Shown in pieces: positions 1 to 16,837 of a stretch of DNA of 16,837 bases. The notes under the pieces were generated by a model. That model was not told where the DNA came from. It saw only the letters and a program-made list of their open reading frames with translations, and searched no databases. The translations under genes were made by a program, and so were the position numbers. The DNA comes from Bugula neritina (taxonomy: Eukaryota > Animalia > Bryozoa). Within the stretch, counting starts at the first letter, position 1. Each line of letters begins with the position of its first letter. The stretch covers positions 1-16,837 of the forward strand of contig CAXIUT010000170.1 of NCBI GenBank assembly GCA_964035545.1. Direction: 5' to 3'.

Positions 1-94
1 CCAACCCCAACCCCAACCCCAACCCCAACCCCAACCCCAACCCCAACCCCAACCCCAACCCCAACCCCAACCCCAACCCCAACCCCAACCCCAA
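1..94. repeat. Left telomere, (CCCCAA)n
   Basis: Uninterrupted CCCCAA hexamers from base 1 to 94. C4A2 is the Tetrahymena-type (oligohymenophorean) ciliate telomere repeat. Confidence 0.99.
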
Positions 95-4099: not shown

Positions 4100-5194
4100 A
4101 TGATGAAAATTTGTCCCTGTCTCAGAGACTTATGCCAGTTTGGCAGAAGAAAATAACTAAAAGAGAAAAGTAGATAAGCTGAAGAAGAGGAACTCATCAA
4201 TCAGATCAACTAGTAAACCGCCCTTGCAGACATCATCCCACAATCATCAACTCGTCATAAAACAACCAAGGATCATTCCAATTAAAAAATCAAAATCCCA
4301 GACTATTTCTAAAAAGAAGAGCCTCAATTATCCAGTGAATAAAGTGATTTGCTTAACGTTAAGATGTAGCTTTCTCCTCAGAACTAAAAGAAATAAATAA
4401 ATAAAAACAATTAAGAAAGAGATATTGAAGATCTCATTCGAGAATAGTTGAAGCTAACACCTCCAAAAGCAATTCAAAAAGAATATTAGTAGTAACCTTA
4501 ACTAAAGATAAAGGAATAATCTTTTTAAGTGATGTTCTAATAGATAAACCAACATACTTTTACAATAAATTTGGATCCTCTTGACCCTTTCTATTCGATT
4601 GTCCACTAAAAAACTAACAAAATAACAGAACATTTTTCCAAGAAAGGACCTTTAATCGATATTGTAGGTTAAAATAAAGCTAGTTTTGAAATAATGAATC
4701 TATCAAGCAACAGACTAACAACATTTTTAATAAAGTACAAGTTAAAATGCAGTTTTTCATAATATTTTACATTATGCAAAAACTAAAAGATCCATTTGTC
4801 CTTTAGCAACACGATCAGTGATATAAAAGTTATTTAGACATTCAAACCTAACCTTACAAAAAACACCATTAAATTCAAACGACTAGGAAGCTTCGAATCT
4901 AGAGACTGTTTTTATATCAAATATCAAAACAGTTCAAAACAGTAACATTGGGAAATCTATATCAATGATGATAAAGCCTAAAGTAGTCCTTCTTTCAAAA
5001 CCTGTGAGTTATTCTGCATCAAAAACATCAGATAACTACAAGCAAGAAAACTATCTATTACTTAATATCTATAGATAGACCTACAGTCAAGTAACATCAA
5101 CAACATGATACCTAAATTAGCCAATTAGTACAAAAACTATCTCAATAGTATGCAAACACATATAGAAAACAACTATCTCCAGGAAACTGCCTGA
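4100..5194 (+). CDS. Putative START/Bet v1-like lipid-binding domain protein with acidic N-terminal region, 364 aa
   Basis: Open frame from ATG 4100 (or 4103) to TGA 5192-5194. The N-terminus MMKICPCLRDLC is followed by a Glu-rich region. The C-terminal ~200 aa contain IKFKRLGSFESRDCFYIKY (START 'xxRD' strand), ITEYLEIDLQS and a terminal amphipathic helix. The CDS is well supported; the domain call is tentative. Confidence 0.6.
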
Positions 5195-5264
5195 TCATTA
5201 TTTATGTCATCAATTAAACTTTAACTTTATTTGTCAAAGTTTAAATATTATCTACAATTTGAAA

Positions 5265-7259
5265 ATGAATAAAATATTACAAATAGTAGAAAGATTTCTT
5301 CGAAAATATCCTTCAACTACCAATATACAACCTCTAAATAACTTCCTCAAACTATAATACCTTTATTCATCTCCTTATACAAACTCGAAACATAAAAAAA
5401 ATATTATCTTTCCCATTAAAAATATCTTGCAAGGCTAAATTCAATAAAATCTATCAAAAAGCCTCATTTATTCCTCGAAAGGAAGAATAGAAGAATCAGA
5501 ATCATTCGATTCTATCTTAATCAATAACAAACACTAAAAAATAATTCAAGACGATTGTTTTGGTAAACCGCATCACACTCTTGACCACTCTCTATGGATT
5601 TATATCGCATAAATTAAGTAAGAATCAGTAAAAAGTTACTTTAATTTTGGAAAAGGAAAGTTAAAATATGTTTTTGATTTCGGGTAGGGATACGAAGGAA
5701 TCAAACAAGTTGGAATATTTATATGGCATAAAAAAAATAAACAAATTTATCAAGTGTAAATTGATAAAAATATTATTCCAGCTCATGTTAGTTTTGCCAA
5801 CTCTTAGGGATCAGAAATTATATTCCATGGATATTAAAGAAAACACTTTGGATCAGGCATCTTACACTGTCTCAACAGAAAAGTCAATCTTTATCATGCT
5901 CAACTAACATTTACTAAAAATCTCTTTAAAGACTAATAACAGATCAAATAGGAACAAAAGTAAGTCAATATATGTAGAAGCTAAGTCACTGATATCTTTG
6001 ATGACAAAAACTAAACAAAAATGTTTCCAAGAGTATCTCCATGCTATAACTATCTGGTCTACCTCAGCGGAACAGATATCATACACACATTCTACCTTGA
6101 TCTAGTCATAGCTAAAAAAGTTAATAAAAAATGGATCTAAACTTATAGGCTCAAAGAAAAGGTTGTAGGATTTTACGATTCCCTGACAAACTATCTTGTT
6201 AAATAAAAAAATTCTATCTACAATATCTTCCAGACATACTAAAACTCAACCAATCAAATTTATAAAATAAACATTTAAACTCATTAAATCATCAACCTTA
6301 CTAAGACATTCCATCATTCTAATTTCACTATTACCGATGTCAAACCAACCGGACTTATCACAGGAACCATTTCCACCTATAACTACAATACCTTTTTCTA
6401 CAGTTAATAAAATCAACTCATCCCGATCGACCCTCTCAGTAAATAATCCTTTTCAGTTCAAGAATATAAAACACCCATACCAGCAGTTCTCCTTACTGAA
6501 AAACATGAAAATATAGATGAAGAATTCAGAGAGAGATCAAAGAATAGACCAATGATCGTTATATTTCATGGTGGCCCTCATGCTACTTACATACCCATGT
6601 TAACAAGTCTCAGATATACTCTTCTAAAAATGGGATATGCTATTCTCCTACCTAACATTCCAGGATCAACCAGCTATGGACCAGAATACCTCAAAAAATA
6701 ACTCAAAGGAATAGGAGAAAAAGATGTCAAGCCGTTTCTCGAACTCTTAGATACTATCCTCGACTAGGAATGGACTATCAATAAGGAAAGAGTTCATGTG
6801 CTTGGAGGAAGTTATGGAGGGTATCTTGCCGCATTACTAGGCTCAAGATATTCTTAATACTTCAAATCAGTCATTATTATGAATGGAGTTCTCAACAATG
6901 CCGCTATGATGTGGTTTACTGATATTCCAGAATGGATTACAGCTGAAACTCTGGGTCATTCTCAACTACACTCCCTTTCCTAATAAGATTATACCTAAAT
7001 GTGGAAGCAATCAGCTTCTATGAAGCCTATGAAAGTCCCAAGTTTACAATTTTTGGGAGGTAAAGATCTAAGAGTTCCTTACAGACAAGGCTTGTTTTTT
7101 GATGCTATAACGAAAGAATATGGTACACCTATTACCACTCATGTTTACTAATAAAGTAGTCATAGTTTGTAAGATTCTGTTGAAACATCAATAGACATTT
7201 TGGTAAAATCAGTTGCCTTTTTATAAGAAATTAAGGAGGAGTAGTTAAAAATTAAATGA
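5265..7259 (+). CDS. APEH: Acylaminoacyl peptidase (APEH-like, peptidase S9C), paralogue 1, 664 aa
   Basis: N-terminal WIYIAE and DFGE motifs, FHGGPH oxyanion segment, nucleophile GGSYGG at ~6804-6821, catalytic Asp in GGKDLRVP and His in ESSHSL. Length is a multiple of 3 and the motifs share one frame. Confidence 0.92.
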
Positions 7260-7361
7260 TATTTCAACTTGATTATATAAAAATAATGATAATTTGATTT
7301 GTTTACTCAATAAAACAACAATTACAATAGTTAGACTTGATTAAAATAAATATCTGTCACA

Positions 7362-8573
7362 ATGCAAAAGGAAGATAATGATTACTATACCCCTCCAAAA
7401 ACAGCTAAAATGTTCATCAACACCATCCAAAACGCCTTCCATAAAAAATAAGGAGACAAAATAGCAAAAGAACTCAAAGATCTCTATTTCACTCCTCTAT
7501 ATCATAATGTACCTGAAAAAAACTGGCATCTTACAATAAATACTCAATCATTCAACGATGCATAACCATCTATTGGATCTGCCTTTGCTAAGTTATTAGA
7601 ACTAGTAAGAGACTATTCGATCGAAAGGGCGGGAAGCCGATGGTCTGAATGTTTTTAAAAGCATATGCAGACCTTGATAGTTGTTCTGAGGGTGTTGTAA
7701 GAGATGAAAGATGTGAAATTTTGGGTTGTGAAGGGGTTATTAGTAGTGTTAAGAGCAACAAAAAAGATATTTTTGACATGTTTGCAAAGAATAAACAATA
7801 GCACAATGGCAGCTCGACTAAAAAACTCTCTCTTCAACACTCTTCAACGTTTTAAAACAGCTAAAGCTTTATAATAAATTTTAAAAAGGTAGTTTCTTTC
7901 ATTGGTTGATGTGATGCAAGTGTCTATTCTTCTTTTCTTTCACAACTACGAACAAATCCAAAGAATTCTCTACTCTTCAAAAATTTATGGATAAATAAGT
8001 GATCGATATATAGATAACTTTTTATTTCAAAAAGGTAAATACGCTCTTATAAATGAGAAGTTTTCATAAGCTGAAAGTAGTTTTATGAAAATAAGACTAA
8101 AAACCCAAGGACAGAAAAGACTAGTCATGAGATATCTCATTCCTTGTAGAATATTTCTTGGAAAACTATATTAATCAAAAAACAAATAATAGTTTACTTA
8201 ATACTAAGAATTAATATCAGCAATAAAGACAGCAAATTTCAAACTATATGATTAAATAACTAAAAGATATCAAAAACTATGGCTCAAAAGAGGCATCTAT
8301 CTGCTAATGGATAGAGTAAAAATCATCCTTTGGCGAACTCTTATCAAACAACTCTTCCATGCTGTTGGAACCAAAATAGATCTATAAATAGTAGAACGAG
8401 TTGTAAATTTACGAGGAGGAAACGAAGAAATCAATGAGTGTATCTGCATTGTAGCCAATCTCATTTATTAGGGATACATTAAAGGATATATATTCCAGAA
8501 TGAAAGCAAGAGGACTTTGGTATTGAAAAGCAGTGGAAACCCTTTTCCTAAGCTTTAGGTGATTGCAAAGTGA
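7362..8573 (+). CDS. PCID2: PCI-domain protein PCID2/Thp1/Csn12-like (TREX-2 type), 403 aa
   Basis: QKRLVMRYLIPCRIFLGK, WLKRGIYLLMDRVKIILWRTL and C-terminal ECICIVANLIYEGYIKGYI...LVLKSSGNPFP match the PCID2 family winged-helix C-terminus. Confidence 0.85.
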
Positions 8574-11764: not shown

Positions 11765-12494
11765 TATAGAATTGTTAAATATTATACTCTTAACTGACCT
11801 TTTGTAATTTAGATAATTTATTGAAATAATCAAACTAAATTAAACTAAAAATCATCACTTTGAACATTAGATATCAAATCAGTCTTAAATACAATTAACC
11901 ATTTTTAAATAGATAATCAAGTTTATTAATAATAATCCAAAATTAACAATTACAACTTTCTTTTAAAATAATCACTCGTTCTAGAACTCTTAGTCAAGAA
12001 AAGAACATAGTTTTCAACTCTGCACGTTTAGATCGATAAATTTTAAATAATATATAAAAGATTAAAACTACTTATCATAAAAACATTTCCAATTCAAAAC
12101 AAGAGAATCAAAATAATAAAAATAATAAAAAGGAACTATATTTCAGTGATATTCATGTTCAAAGGAATTATCAACAACTAAGAAATCAATAAAACAACTC
12201 TTAATTACCTTCAGAAGGATCCTAGTCATTCTCAAAAAATTAAAAATACAAATGGACAGATAGAATACAACCAGATACAAAAGAAATTTTTATAAAAAAT
12301 AGTAAATTAGTTAATAAGTCAAAAGAAGCTTTTTTAAATTATAATAGTCAAAAGCCATTTTCTAAAAGAGTTACATAAAAAAGAAAAGTTTTTTTTCGAA
12401 CTAAATAAAACTAATATGATTTTGAATAAATCTGATTCGTTCATAATTGGTCAGCTACTATCTGAGTAATTATATCAAATTACTTAAAATATAA

Positions 12495-13304
12495 TCATGG
12501 ATCAGTCATCTAATACTTCAAAGCTGCAGTATCAAACACCATCAACATAAGTGCCCAGCTAGTGGCTTGAAAAGGAATAACCATAGCTCCTTTGTAAAAC
12601 CCTTTAAATCCTTCTTCTTTCCATATTTTACTTCCATATTTTAGAAATCCAAGAAGTGAGTTCATGATAATCCTTCTCCTTCTAACAATTTCGATGGGAT
12701 ATACAGCAGTTTCAGCAATAATGGAACAAAAATAAGCTAAAAAGGCTTTTTATTGAATAGTTTTTGCCTTAGTTTTATTAGTATCATAAGTTCCATTATA
12801 TATAGCTCGATAAGTGCACATGGTCAATAGTACATTAGGATATCCTTTATAGAAATATTTATAGCCATATTGAGAAGTGATAGTGGTAATTGCCTTTAAG
12901 ATTGAAAGATGTTTTTGAGTGTTGTTATTTTGCAACTGTCGGACGATATCAGTCGGATAGATGAGAGTTGTTGCTGATATTCCAGATGCCATTGATATAA
13001 AGATGTTGTTAATGAATTTGTTTTAAAAATACCTTTGAAGAGTTCCACGCACATAGTAATTAATCACCTCTATTGGATATATTCTACTCAACATTACCAA
13101 ATTTCCCTTCCAAAATGCTAATATCCCCTCAGTTTTATAAATAGTTGAAGCGCAATTCGATATCGATCTGTATGATTGGGAAATACGACCAAGAGCCAGC
13201 AACTATTTGTTTGTTATCATACGCATCTTCAATATCTATAATGGAGTGTTTATCGTGAATATTAATATCACAGAAACAGTCTTCAATATTATTTACTCCA
13301 ACAT
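12495..13304 (-). CDS. Mitochondrial carrier (SLC25), divergent ADP/ATP-carrier-like, 269 aa
   Basis: Three Px[DE]xx[KR] signatures: TPLEILKMR, YPTDIVRQ, YPIEIVRRR. Also EGILAFWKGN, YRAIYNGTYDT and EEGFKGFYKGA. The loop NKELLALGRISQSYRSISNC and the YRAxYxGxYD motif are AAC-like. Confidence 0.88.
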
Positions 13305-13346
13305 TGCATCACCTATTATTTAATTAATTAAATATATCTCATTATT

Positions 13347-14618
13347 TTATTGCTTATCATTTATCATCTTATCATTTATTAATTATCATCTTATTGCTTA
13401 TCATTTATCATCTTATCATTTATTAATTATCATCTTATTGCTTATCATTTATCATCTTATCATTTATTAATTATCATCTTATTGCTTATCATTTATCATC
13501 TTATCATTTATTAATTATCATCTTATTGCTTATCATTTATCATCTTATCATTTATTAATTATCATCTTATTGCTTATCATTTATCATCTTATCATTTATT
13601 AATTATCATCTTATTGCTTATCATTTATCATCTTATCATTTATTAATTATCATCTTATTGCTTATCATTTATCATCTTATCATTTATTAATTATCATCTT
13701 ATTGCTTATCATTTATCATCTTATCATTTATTAATTATCATCTTATTGCTTATCATTTATCATCTTATCATTTATTAATTATCATCTTATTGCTTATCAT
13801 TTATCATCTTATCATTTATTAATTATCATCTTATTGCTTATCATTTATCATCTTATCATTTATTAATTATCATCTTATTGCTTATCATTTATCATCTTAT
13901 CATTTATTAATTATCATCTTATTGCTTATCATTTATCATCTTATCATTTATTAATTATCATCTTATTGCTTATCATTTATCATCTTATCATTTATTAATT
14001 ATCATCTTATTGCTTATCATTTATCATCTTATCATTTATTAATTATCATCTTATTGCTTATCATTTATCATCTTATCATTTATTAATTATCATCTTATTG
14101 CTTATCATTTATCATCTTATCATTTATTAATTATCATCTTATTGCTTATCATTTATCATCTTATCATTTATTAATTATCATCTTATTGCTTATCATTTAT
14201 CATCTTATCATTTATTAATTATCATCTTATTGCTTATCATTTATCATCTTATCATTTATTAATTATCATCTTATTGCTTATCATTTATCATCTTATCATT
14301 TATTAATTATCATCTTATTGCTTATCATTTATCATCTTATCATTTATTAATTATCATCTTATTGCTTATCATTTATCATCTTATCATTTATTAATTATCA
14401 TCTTATTGCTTATCATTTATCATCTTATCATTTATTAATTATCATCTTATTGCTTATCATTTATCATCTTATCATTTATTAATTATCATCTTATTGCTTA
14501 TCATTTATCATCTTATCATTTATTAATTATCATCTTATTGCTTATCATTTATCATCTTATCATTTATTAATTATCATCTTATTGCTTATCATTTATCATC
14601 TTATCATTTATTAATTAT
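13347..14618. repeat. Perfect tandem array: 44-bp unit x 28 plus a 40-bp partial copy
   Basis: Unit TTATTGCTTATCATTTATCATCTTATCATTTATTAATTATCATC. Units start at 13347, 13391 ... 14579. Display lines recur every 660 bp (15 x 44), and I saw no variant copies. Confidence 0.98.
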
Positions 14619-14632
14619 TATTTTATTTACCA

Positions 14633-16717
14633 TCACTTAGAAAACTCTTCCCCTCCCTTTTCTAATTTGTTCTCGATCTCTTTTATCTGCTTCTTTTTCA
14701 AGACCTGCCCCTCTAATAAAAGTTCAGGCTTTTATAAAAAAAATATCGTTTTCAAAGTTATATCCATAGCAGTATCAACAGAGTCCGACAAAGAATGTCC
14801 GCTATTCTCGTATACATAGGTATTAATAGGCACTCCGCTCTCTTTAGTAATCGAATCGAAGAATAATCCCTGTCTCCAAGCCACTCTTCTATCTTTGGCT
14901 CCCAAAAACTGAAGAGTTGGAATTTTCATCGGTTCGGAAGAAGGAGATTGTCTCCACAGAGCTTGATAATCCTCCCAACTCAAGTTGTGCAGTTCACACT
15001 TGCCTAAAGTTTCAGCAGCATTCCAATCAGGAATATCACTAAACCACAAATTTCCAATCAGATTGATCACTCCATTCAGAATAATTGCGCTTTTAAAGAC
15101 CTCAGCGTATCTGACGCCAAATATCGCTGACATATAACCTCCATAACTGCCTCCCATTGTATGCACATTGCACTTGTCTATATCTGGATGATCACTTAAG
15201 ACTTTTCGAGTTACTCCAATGACCTAAGCAGCATCTACTTCTCCTATTTTAGCTAAACTGGCCTCAAGAAATTCTTTACCATAACCTGCTGAACCTGAAA
15301 AGTTAGGATATAAAAGATAAAATCCCATCTTTAGGAGAACATATCTGAGACAAGTAAGCATATGTCCATAGGATCCATGAGGTCCACCATGTGGCATCAC
15401 AATAAGAGGTCTTTTTGAAACTCTTCCTTCAAACTGACTCCAAATATGTTCTTCTTTCGCTGATACCAGGAGAGCATGGATCGGTTAAAAATATTCCTTT
15501 TGTAAGAAGTCCTCTTTTGATGGAGGTTCAATAATAGTTATCTTTTTATGTTTAATATAGAAGAAAGAATTATAGTTATTGGTAGTGACGATTCCAAATA
15601 TGACATTTTGTTCTATACTGGTGATCTAAAAGGAGTGATTTAAATAATTTTAAGTGATGTTGTTATACTAGCCTGTTTCTAAGTTTATTTTGTAAATATG
15701 AGAGCTACTTCTTTCACTTGTCTGAGTTATTCCGAATACTTGGTCATCTTACTAGATTAAATAGTTTTTAAGAGTAGAATTATATCCTATGATCTTTTAC
15801 TTTATCCGGTTGGTCTCCACCCATTCTCCTTCCTTCTTCTTACATACAACGAAATCTTTATAAAAAGTATGAGTCTTACCAGTTCCACTCAAATAAACAC
15901 AATAATTCATACATTTTGATATCTTTGGAAACACTTTGGTTTAGTTTTTGTCATTAACGAATAACTCAATGACCTAAGCAATCACCTCTTTCTTGTCATT
16001 TTTCTTTTATTCTACTTATTTTTCGTTCTCCAGTATTTAATATTTCGCAGAATAGATACCAATAGGTTTGTTGAAGCAAAAAACGAGGCCATAGCCAAAA
16101 GATCGAACCTTATATGCATGAAATATGATTTATGTGCCTTCTTGATTAGCAAAGGAAGCATAGCATGGAATCAAGTTGCTTTATATGGGAATTCTAACAA
16201 CTTTTTTCAGTGCTTTATTCCACACAAAGATTCCAGTTTCTTTAATATTGTCATAGGTTTATCCGAAATCATGTTTAAAGGGTAATTTTCCTTTACCTTG
16301 ATTGAAATAACTTTTAGGTTAATCTTGCTTGATTTAAGCTATATAGACCCATTTAGATCCATTTGAGCTAGATTGAGCTTCTCCAAAAACATCATCTTGA
16401 AACACCTTCTCATGCTTACCTTTAGTCTCAATTGAATCGAATGAACTACTTTCCTATATTCTTCCTTTTTCACTGTTATGAGATAACCTTTTCATAACCG
16501 GACTGATCTTTTGAAACTGTTTCGTGTTTTAGTGAATGTAGTAAGACTCCTTTTTATTTTTGCTATCTGTGTAAGGAGAAGAATATGAATGAGTGAGTTT
16601 AAAGAAATTCTAAAAATACTAGATTGATGCTACAGATGGATATTTCTTTAAATACTCCTATACTTTCTCTAGTACTAGCTATTGAAGAACCTTTTGCTCT
16701 GTTATTGGTATTTACAT
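14633..16717 (-). CDS. APEH: Acylaminoacyl peptidase (APEH-like, peptidase S9C), paralogue 2, 694 aa
   Basis: Starts ATG TAA ATA (MEIPITEQ...) at 16717. Contains WVYIAE, DFGE, VMPHGGPH, GGSYGG, GAKDRRV and ENSGHSL. Includes track ORF 14732..15166 in frame and ends ...GGEEFSK* at TGA 14635-14633. Confidence 0.92.
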
Positions 16718-16741: not shown

Positions 16742-16837
16742 GGGGTTGGGGTTGGGGTTGGGGTTGGGGTTGGGGTTGGGGTTGGGGTTGGGGTTGGGGT
16801 TGGGGTTGGGGGTTGGGGTTGGGGGGTTGGGGTTGGG
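16742..16837. repeat. Right telomere, (GGGGTT)n
   Basis: GGGGTT hexamers to the end of the window, the reverse complement of the left end, with one G5 and one G6 run distally. Confidence 0.99.

What the first reader, a model, noticed from the sequence alone, without database searches (positions are those of the whole stretch)
13341..14627. 1.27-kb perfect satellite bracketed by an 11-bp direct repeat: candidate retained IES or somatic amplification
Seen: ATTATTTTATT occurs at 13341-13351 and 14617-14627, partly overlapping both array ends. The array lies 14 bp past the APEH-2 stop and 42 bp before the carrier ATG. Deleting it with one repeat copy (1276 bp) leaves a 52-bp spacer, typical for this chromosome. 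Known: ciliate macronuclei are largely purged of satellites, and germline-limited IESs are bounded by short, often TA-containing, direct repeats. Inference: an unexcised or facultatively excised IES-like element, or a recent rolling-circle/slippage amplification of a single 44-bp spacer, possibly acting as a copy-number, replication or segregation element. This is the best candidate here for an undescribed system.
Basis: partly seen in the sequence, partly recalled or inferred. Interest (0 to 1): 0.75.

Follow-up and report, generated by a model that had tools for sequence, protein, structure and literature searches.

The report
Ordinary young minisatellite in ciliate spacer
A 44-base unit repeated 29 times sits between two genes on a tiny somatic ciliate chromosome; its "bracketing" 11-base repeat is the array's own first and last unit junction, so it looks like an ordinary, recently expanded minisatellite and not a new excision or copy-control system.

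Summary
Period 44 is perfect from 13347 to 14618 (1272 bp), and ATTATTTTATT occurs only at 13341 and 14617. The spacer arithmetic (14 bp, 42 bp, 52 bp left after deletion) is correct.

The bracket is not an independent feature. 14617-13341 = 1276 = 29 x 44, so the two 11-mers are junctions 0 and 29 of a lattice of 30 unit junctions. The 28 inner junctions read ATCATCTTATT, which differs by two C/T changes.

The unit is nested: heptamer TTATCAT, then 22 bp, then 44 bp. Its G+C (18%) matches the ordinary spacers of this chromosome. It has no GT on either strand, no inverted repeats, no fold, no Rfam or tRNA match, and no copy elsewhere in the assembly.

A second, different private AT-rich array (29-bp unit, 2.2 kb) lies on another ciliate contig (C11), in about 170 kb sampled.

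Best reading: native spacer DNA amplified by slippage or unequal exchange. The IES reading has no support of its own.

Interest is low.

Earlier notes of this scan describe the same ciliate's minichromosomes and internal telomere tracts. The notes I was shown did not cover this array; one follow-up report overlapping my stretch exists and was withheld.

The parts
13347..14618 (.). Perfect period-44 tandem array (28.9 units; unit begins TTATTGCTTATCAT...), 18% G+C
13341..13351 (+).
14617..14627 (+).
14619..14640 (.). Decayed partial unit: 14 of 22 bases still match the periodic expectation, running into the peptidase stop codon
13305..13346 (-). 42-bp native spacer directly upstream of the carrier ATG (inferred promoter and 5' leader), left intact by the array
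   Evidence: inference
12495..13304 (-). Mitochondrial carrier gene (stop 12495-97, ATG 13302-04)
   Evidence: Pfam Mito_carr on three stop-free pieces; translation
14633..16714 (-). S9 peptidase (APEH-like) gene, stop 14633-35; orthologues at 41-62% amino-acid identity in 19 metagenome contigs
1..94 (.). C4A2 telomere (left end of the minichromosome)
16742..16837 (.). G4T2 telomere (right end), with a few homopolymer-length irregularities

Best explanation
This is a young minisatellite, private to one locus, with a higher-order repeat structure. It is built from the native AT-rich spacer between two co-oriented genes on a complete 16.8-kb macronuclear minichromosome of a ciliate that travels in another organism's assembly.

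Shown: 30 junction 11-mers lie at exact 44-bp steps. The first and last read ATTATTTTATT and the 28 inner ones ATCATCTTATT.

Inferred history: a heptamer-rich spacer (TTATCAT-like) first formed a 22-bp and then a 44-bp unit. An ancestral segment R-Y-R (11-bp R, 33-bp Y) was duplicated by replication slippage or unequal exchange. One inner junction acquired two T-to-C changes, and that variant was amplified to about 28 copies. The two outer junctions abut unique DNA, cannot be replaced by unequal exchange, and so keep the ancestral form.

The array most likely has no function. It is tolerated because it leaves 42 bp upstream of the carrier ATG and 14 bp after the peptidase stop untouched.
For: Exact period 44 over 1272 bp. 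1276 = 29 x 44, and all 30 junctions are in register, with only the two outermost sharing the T,T variant. The unit splits into 7+7+7+1 twice; the two 22-bp halves match at 17 of 22 bases, and the cyclic self-match is 34/44 at shift 22 (TRF period 7). The right flank still matches the lattice at 14 of 22 bases. Array G+C is 0.18, against 0.09-0.19 for ordinary spacers of the same chromosome. The unit occurs nowhere else in the 216-Mb assembly, even with 3 mismatches allowed, and the heptamer is not enriched in 168 kb of ciliate DNA (131 matches against 161 for the reversed control). There are no inverted repeats beyond trivial AT matches. The single strand does not fold (MFE 0). There is no Rfam family and no tRNA. 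Neither strand contains GT, and TGA occurs 37-39 times in each minus-strand frame. A second private array with an unrelated 29-bp unit lies at C11:5310-7533. Tandem repeats are reported in the Tetrahymena MAC (PMC1557398), and Paramecium minisatellites are mainly, but not only, germline-limited (PMC13085455).
Against: No reads, no germline (MIC) sequence and no second individual were available, so neither copy-number variation nor an array-free form could be looked for. Orthologous peptidase loci in relatives do not have the carrier gene next door, so the ancestral spacer could not be seen directly. The order of events (R-Y-R first, C,C variant later) is a parsimony inference. Perfect identity of 28 units is also what consensus polishing of few reads could give.
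Confidence: 0.8

Rival explanations
1. A retained or facultatively excised IES-like element, whose 11-bp terminal direct repeats mark the excision boundaries.
For: The 11-mer is exact and rare in the window. It contains TA. Removal of 1276 bp would leave a 52-bp spacer, which is within the normal range. In Paramecium most minisatellite DNA is germline-limited (PMC13085455).
Against: The repeat is in register with the array and is two of its 30 junctions, so it carries no independent information. The sequence sits in a telomere-capped somatic chromosome. Its composition equals native spacer. No second form of the locus exists in the assembly. Matches to the Paramecium end consensus TAYAGYNR are weak, at best 3 of 5 informative positions. 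Tetrahymena data argue that excision targets foreign DNA, not repeats as such (PMC1557398).
Confidence: 0.05
2. The array is real but its length or perfection is partly technical: collapse, expansion or over-polishing in a contig built from few long reads of a low-coverage cobiont.
For: The contig is about the length of a single long read. The right telomere shows homopolymer-length irregularities (GGGGGTT, GGGGGGTT), typical of thin coverage. There is only one copy of the locus in the assembly.
Against: The array edges grade into unique flanks through point variants, in register, which an artefact would not produce. The array has no homopolymer longer than 3. A 1.27-kb array is far shorter than a long read. 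A second, imperfect array on C11 shows that such arrays exist in this organism.
Confidence: 0.07
3. A functional cis element: a spacer or insulator separating two tandem genes, a terminator pad for the peptidase gene, or an AT-rich replication origin.
For: Strong strand asymmetry (73% pyrimidine on the + strand; GC skew -0.75). There are four TGATAA motifs per unit, all on the sense strand of both genes. The position is exactly between a stop and a start. At least two of about eight sampled chromosomes carry kb-sized AT-rich arrays.
Against: The units of the two arrays are unrelated and each is private. Most sampled chromosomes have none. The motif is not enriched elsewhere. Other gene pairs on this chromosome manage with 33-117 bp. 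The array is not found in relatives (though those are short-read contigs). Four ATGs and four TGAs per unit would cripple any transcript leader.
Confidence: 0.08

Closest known systems
Eukaryotic minisatellites (VNTR) and higher-order tandem repeats generated by replication slippage or unequal exchange
   Same: Unit of 10-100 bp. Head-to-tail, locus-specific array. Nested sub-periods (7/22/44). Homogeneous interior with variant or decayed edge units. Non-coding and compositionally like its surroundings.
   Different: It sits on a 16.8-kb, telomere-capped, amitotically dividing polyploid somatic chromosome. It is AT-rich, whereas classical vertebrate minisatellites are GC-rich. Polymorphism was not examined.
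Tandem repeats retained in the Tetrahymena thermophila macronucleus (PMC1557398)
   Same: Non-invasive repetitive DNA that passes into, or persists in, the somatic genome of an oligohymenophorean ciliate with C4A2 telomeres.
   Different: A different organism (TAA/TAG are sense codons; earlier notes say peritrich code), much smaller chromosomes, and no germline reference to compare with.
Paramecium minisatellites and TA-bounded IESs (PMC13085455)
   Same: AT-rich tandem arrays with species-specific units. The short direct repeat at the ends superficially resembles IES boundaries.
   Different: Paramecium minisatellites are mainly germline-limited and often tied to Helitrons at chromosome ends. 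Here the array is somatic, internal, has no hairpin or Helitron ends, and its 'terminal repeat' is its own period.
Second array of the same ciliate, G000 C11:5310-7533
   Same: A kb-sized, AT-rich, private minisatellite on a small somatic chromosome.
   Different: Unrelated 29-bp unit (58/87 higher order), only 93% homogeneous, and it abuts an internal G4T2 tract. A short (3-unit) and a long (about 76-unit) version lie on either side of that tract.

Membership tests
Minisatellite / higher-order tandem repeat | Head-to-tail copies of a 10-100 bp unit | tested here: met
   44 bp x 28.9 exact copies, no indels
Minisatellite / higher-order tandem repeat | Locus-specific, not dispersed | tested here: met
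   The unit is found only at C179:13347-14627 in the 216-Mb assembly, even at 3 mismatches or fewer. It is absent from the viral and prokaryote collections.
Minisatellite / higher-order tandem repeat | Edge units variant or decayed relative to a homogeneous interior | tested here: met
   The outer junctions read ATTATT against 28 inner ATCATC. The right flank matches the lattice at 14 of 22 bases.
Minisatellite / higher-order tandem repeat | Copy-number polymorphism between molecules or individuals | not testable with these tools
Ciliate IES (internally eliminated sequence) | Present in germline DNA, absent from mature somatic chromosomes | tested here: not met
   The array lies inside a contig capped by C4A2/G4T2 telomeres at both ends, which is a somatic chromosome. 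Retention in a subset of copies cannot be excluded.
Ciliate IES (internally eliminated sequence) | Boundary direct repeat that is independent of the element's content | tested here: not met
   The 11-mers are 29 x 44 bp apart and in phase with the 28 inner junctions.
Ciliate IES (internally eliminated sequence) | Paramecium-type TA ends with the TAYAGYNR consensus | tested here: inconclusive
   The best register gives 6/8 and 6/8, of which 3 positions are free, in 82% A+T DNA. The end consensus for this ciliate group is unknown to me.
Ciliate IES (internally eliminated sequence) | An excised form detectable | not testable with these tools
   No alternative contig exists. Reads were not available.
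Transposon / MITE / Helitron | Terminal inverted repeats, a 3' hairpin or a coding capacity | tested here: not met
   Only trivial AT-rich 16-nt, 81% matches. The single strand does not fold. TGA is present in all minus-strand frames.
Tiny-intron / micro-exon cassettes noted elsewhere in this ciliate | Tandem ~20-nt GT...AG introns separated by 1-2-nt exons | tested here: not met
   There is no GT dinucleotide on either strand of the array.
Structured non-coding RNA | Match to a family, or a stable conserved fold | tested here: not met
   Rfam gives 0 matches. MFE is 0 kcal/mol, z = +1.5 (DNA parameters). No tRNA.

The most novel reading that the evidence does not exclude
Kilobase-scale private minisatellites (this one and the one on C11) are somatically unstable in this ciliate's polyploid, amitotic macronucleus. 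Their copy number would then differ between chromosome copies, and they would mark fragile sites where breakage and new telomere addition create the nested or 'train' chromosome forms seen on other contigs.
Probability: 0.1. Interest if true: 0.45.

Novelty: new member of a known kind. Interest (0 to 1): 0.15.

Why it matters
It matters little as a system. It shows that a perfect array with matching ends needs no excision or amplification machinery, and it removes a false lead. It has modest value as a ready-made VNTR marker for this uncultured ciliate. Together with the C11 array, it also shows that the somatic minichromosomes of this lineage are not free of satellites, so long spacers here should not be read as retained germline DNA without germline data.

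Tried and rejected
- **Alternative form of the locus in the same assembly.** Both flanks are unique to C179.
- **Other assemblies of the same organism.** Exact-match scans for the right flank and the unit in genome contigs and viral contigs found nothing.
- **Orthologous spacer in relatives.** Nineteen metagenome contigs carry the peptidase orthologue (41-62% identity); a twentieth locus did not align. None has the carrier gene beside it, and one carries a carrier-like fragment about 6.8 kb away on the opposite strand. As short-read contigs they hold no large arrays, so this is uninformative.
- **Shared regulatory motif.** The heptamer and the junction motif are not enriched. The 14-mer ATTATCATCTTATT recurs only in a 24-bp x 3 mini-array on C11.
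- **Protein-coding repeat on the + strand.** All three frames are open only because TGA needs a G that the strand lacks. The period is not a multiple of 3, and the ORFs run antisense into two Pfam-supported genes. Rejected.
- **Micro-exon cassette, transposon, Helitron, ncRNA.** Rejected; see the membership tests.
- **Gene finder.** Simple codon-usage and position-specific finders were too weak to annotate the chromosome, so spacer lengths come from reading translations by eye.
- **Method note.** For local tblastn in a script I translated the two flanking genes with TAA/TAG as sense codons. For the shared tools only stop-free pieces were sent, by reference.

Full report
**What the window is.** The 16,837-bp window is a complete linear molecule, capped by (CCCCAA)n at the left and (GGGGTT)n at the right. 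It is contig C179 of a 216-Mb, 321-contig assembly. Many small contigs of that assembly carry the same telomeres. Long open frames appear only when TGA is the sole stop codon. Earlier notes of this scan call the organism a peritrich-code ciliate (TAA/TAG = Glu) carried along in an animal's assembly. I did not test the taxonomic label. Comparison of two peptidase paralogues on this chromosome is compatible with TAA/TAG being sense codons.

**Checking the observation.**
- TRF reports a 44-bp unit, 29.1 copies, 99% matches, no indels, at 13347-14627.
- A script shows that period 44 is exact from 13347 to 14618, and that only the last four bases of copy 29 differ.
- ATTATTTTATT occurs twice in the window, at 13341 and 14617. 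The expectation is 0.27, and 7 of 200 shuffles give two or more.
- The flanking genes are both on the minus strand. To the right is an S9 peptidase (APEH-like) whose stop is at 14633-35. To the left is a mitochondrial carrier whose ATG is at 13302-04. Both are supported by Pfam matches on stop-free pieces sent by reference. The peptidase also has orthologues at 41-62% amino-acid identity in 19 metagenome contigs.
- Other spacers that I could read on this chromosome are 33, 70, 102 and 117 bp, with one unexplained stretch of about 730 bp.

**The bracket is the array.** 14617-13341 = 1276 = 29 x 44. Searching ATYATYTTATT gives 30 matches on the + strand at exact 44-bp steps from 13341 to 14617. 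The first and last are ATTATTTTATT and the 28 between are ATCATCTTATT. The "direct repeat" is therefore junction 0 and junction 29 of the array's own lattice. Any tandem array carries such a repeat at its ends, so it says nothing about excision.

Both outer junctions share the same two-base variant. This is most simply explained as follows (inference):
1. ATTATT was the ancestral state, in a segment R-Y-R with an 11-bp R and a 33-bp Y.
2. The C,C form arose once at an inner junction.
3. That inner unit was then amplified.
4. The outer junctions abut unique DNA and cannot be overwritten by unequal exchange.

On this reading the pre-expansion spacer was 96 bp, not 52 bp. Both values are within the local range.

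**Anatomy of the unit.**
- The 44-mer parses as TTATTGC TTATCAT TTATCAT C / TTATCAT TTATTAA TTATCAT C. That is two 22-bp halves matching at 17 of 22 bases, each made of three heptamers plus one base (TRF period 7). This nesting is the usual trace of stepwise slippage and unequal exchange.
- Beyond the right edge, 14 of the next 22 bases still fit the lattice, up to and including the peptidase stop codon. The array therefore grades into its native flank.
- Its G+C (0.18) equals that of the ordinary spacers (0.09-0.19). It is native spacer DNA, not an import.

**What it is not.**
- *Not a member of a dispersed family.* The unit occurs nowhere else in the assembly, even with three mismatches. It is absent from the viral and prokaryote collections.
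- *Not spliceable.* There is no GT dinucleotide on either strand, so it cannot be one of the tiny-intron/micro-exon cassettes noted elsewhere in this organism.
- *Not coding.* The minus (sense) strand has four ATGs and four TGAs per unit, and 37-39 TGAs in each frame. The + strand frames are open only because that strand has one G per unit. They run antisense into both genes, and 44 is not a multiple of 3.
- *Not a transposon.* There are no terminal inverted repeats or hairpins.
- *Not structured.* The single strand does not fold at all (MFE 0, z +1.5).
- *Not a known RNA.* Rfam and ARAGORN find nothing.
- *Not a shared motif.* The heptamer is not enriched in 168 kb of ciliate DNA: 131 matches against 161 for the reversed control.

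**Analogues.** In the only sample I could fetch (parts of seven other ciliate contigs), TRF finds one more large array. It lies at C11:5310-7533, with a 29-bp base unit (58/87 higher order), 2.2 kb long and 93% matches. It is also private to its contig, and its unit is unrelated to this one. So kb-sized AT-rich arrays are not rare in this somatic genome, but they do not form a family.

The literature agrees that ciliate somatic genomes are depleted of repeats, not free of them:
- The Tetrahymena MAC paper reports small but significant amounts of repetitive DNA in the MAC. It argues that excision targets foreign DNA, not repeats as such (PMC1557398).
- In Paramecium, minisatellites are mainly, but not exclusively, germline-limited (PMC13085455).

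**Likely consequences (inference).**
- With 116 upstream ATGs, the array cannot be part of the carrier's leader. The carrier transcript must therefore start in the 42 bp left of the array.
- The peptidase transcript probably ends in the first unit or units.
- An in-frame ATG at 13367 in the first unit could add 21 codons to the carrier if transcription started further upstream. Nothing suggests that it does.
- The array is most simply neutral ballast between two intact gene ends.

**What could not be done.**
- No reads, coverage, germline DNA or RNA were available. Copy-number variation, an array-free form and the true unit count in reads therefore remain untested.
- Relatives do not share the gene order and are short-read contigs, so the ancestral spacer was not observed.

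**Verdict.** The IES-type reading is not supported, and the slippage-amplification reading is supported. This is an ordinary, recently expanded, locus-private minisatellite, of low interest.

Noticed in passing
L015 (G000 C11) 5100-7571: A 2.2-kb private minisatellite (29-bp unit) begins right after an internal G4T2 tract (C11:5251-5309). The last ~70 bp before the tract (end of a 3-unit mini-array plus a 26-bp flank ending CAGATATTG) are about 90% identical to the end of the long array plus its flank (7500-7571; whole 150-bp alignment, mean column identity 89%). So a short-array copy capped by a telomere is followed by a long-array copy that continues into more chromosome.
   Followed up: partly
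L017 (G000 C11:20001-21645) 122-189: A 24-bp x 3 mini-array shares the exact 14-mer ATTATCATCTTATT with the unit junction of the window's array. I found no other occurrence in 168 kb of ciliate DNA.
   Followed up: partly
window 11765-12494: A stretch of about 730 bp with 21% G+C and no gene I could recognise lies between the ATG of a MORN-repeat gene (11764, minus) and the carrier stop (12495-97). This is far longer than the 33-117 bp spacers elsewhere on the chromosome. There is no tRNA or Rfam match.
   Followed up: no
window 5265-7259 (+) and 14636-16714 (-): Two diverged S9 peptidase (APEH-like) paralogues lie in inverted orientation on one 16.8-kb chromosome. The second starts about 25 bp from the right telomere.
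   Followed up: no
window 16742-16837: The right telomere contains GGGGGTT and GGGGGGTT variants among the GGGGTT repeats. These are either homopolymer read errors at thin coverage or real repeat variants.
   Followed up: no
L027-L028 (G000 C17): This 17.4-kb contig has 46-49% G+C, unlike the ciliate contigs (25-34%), so it is probably from a different organism in the same assembly.
   Followed up: no
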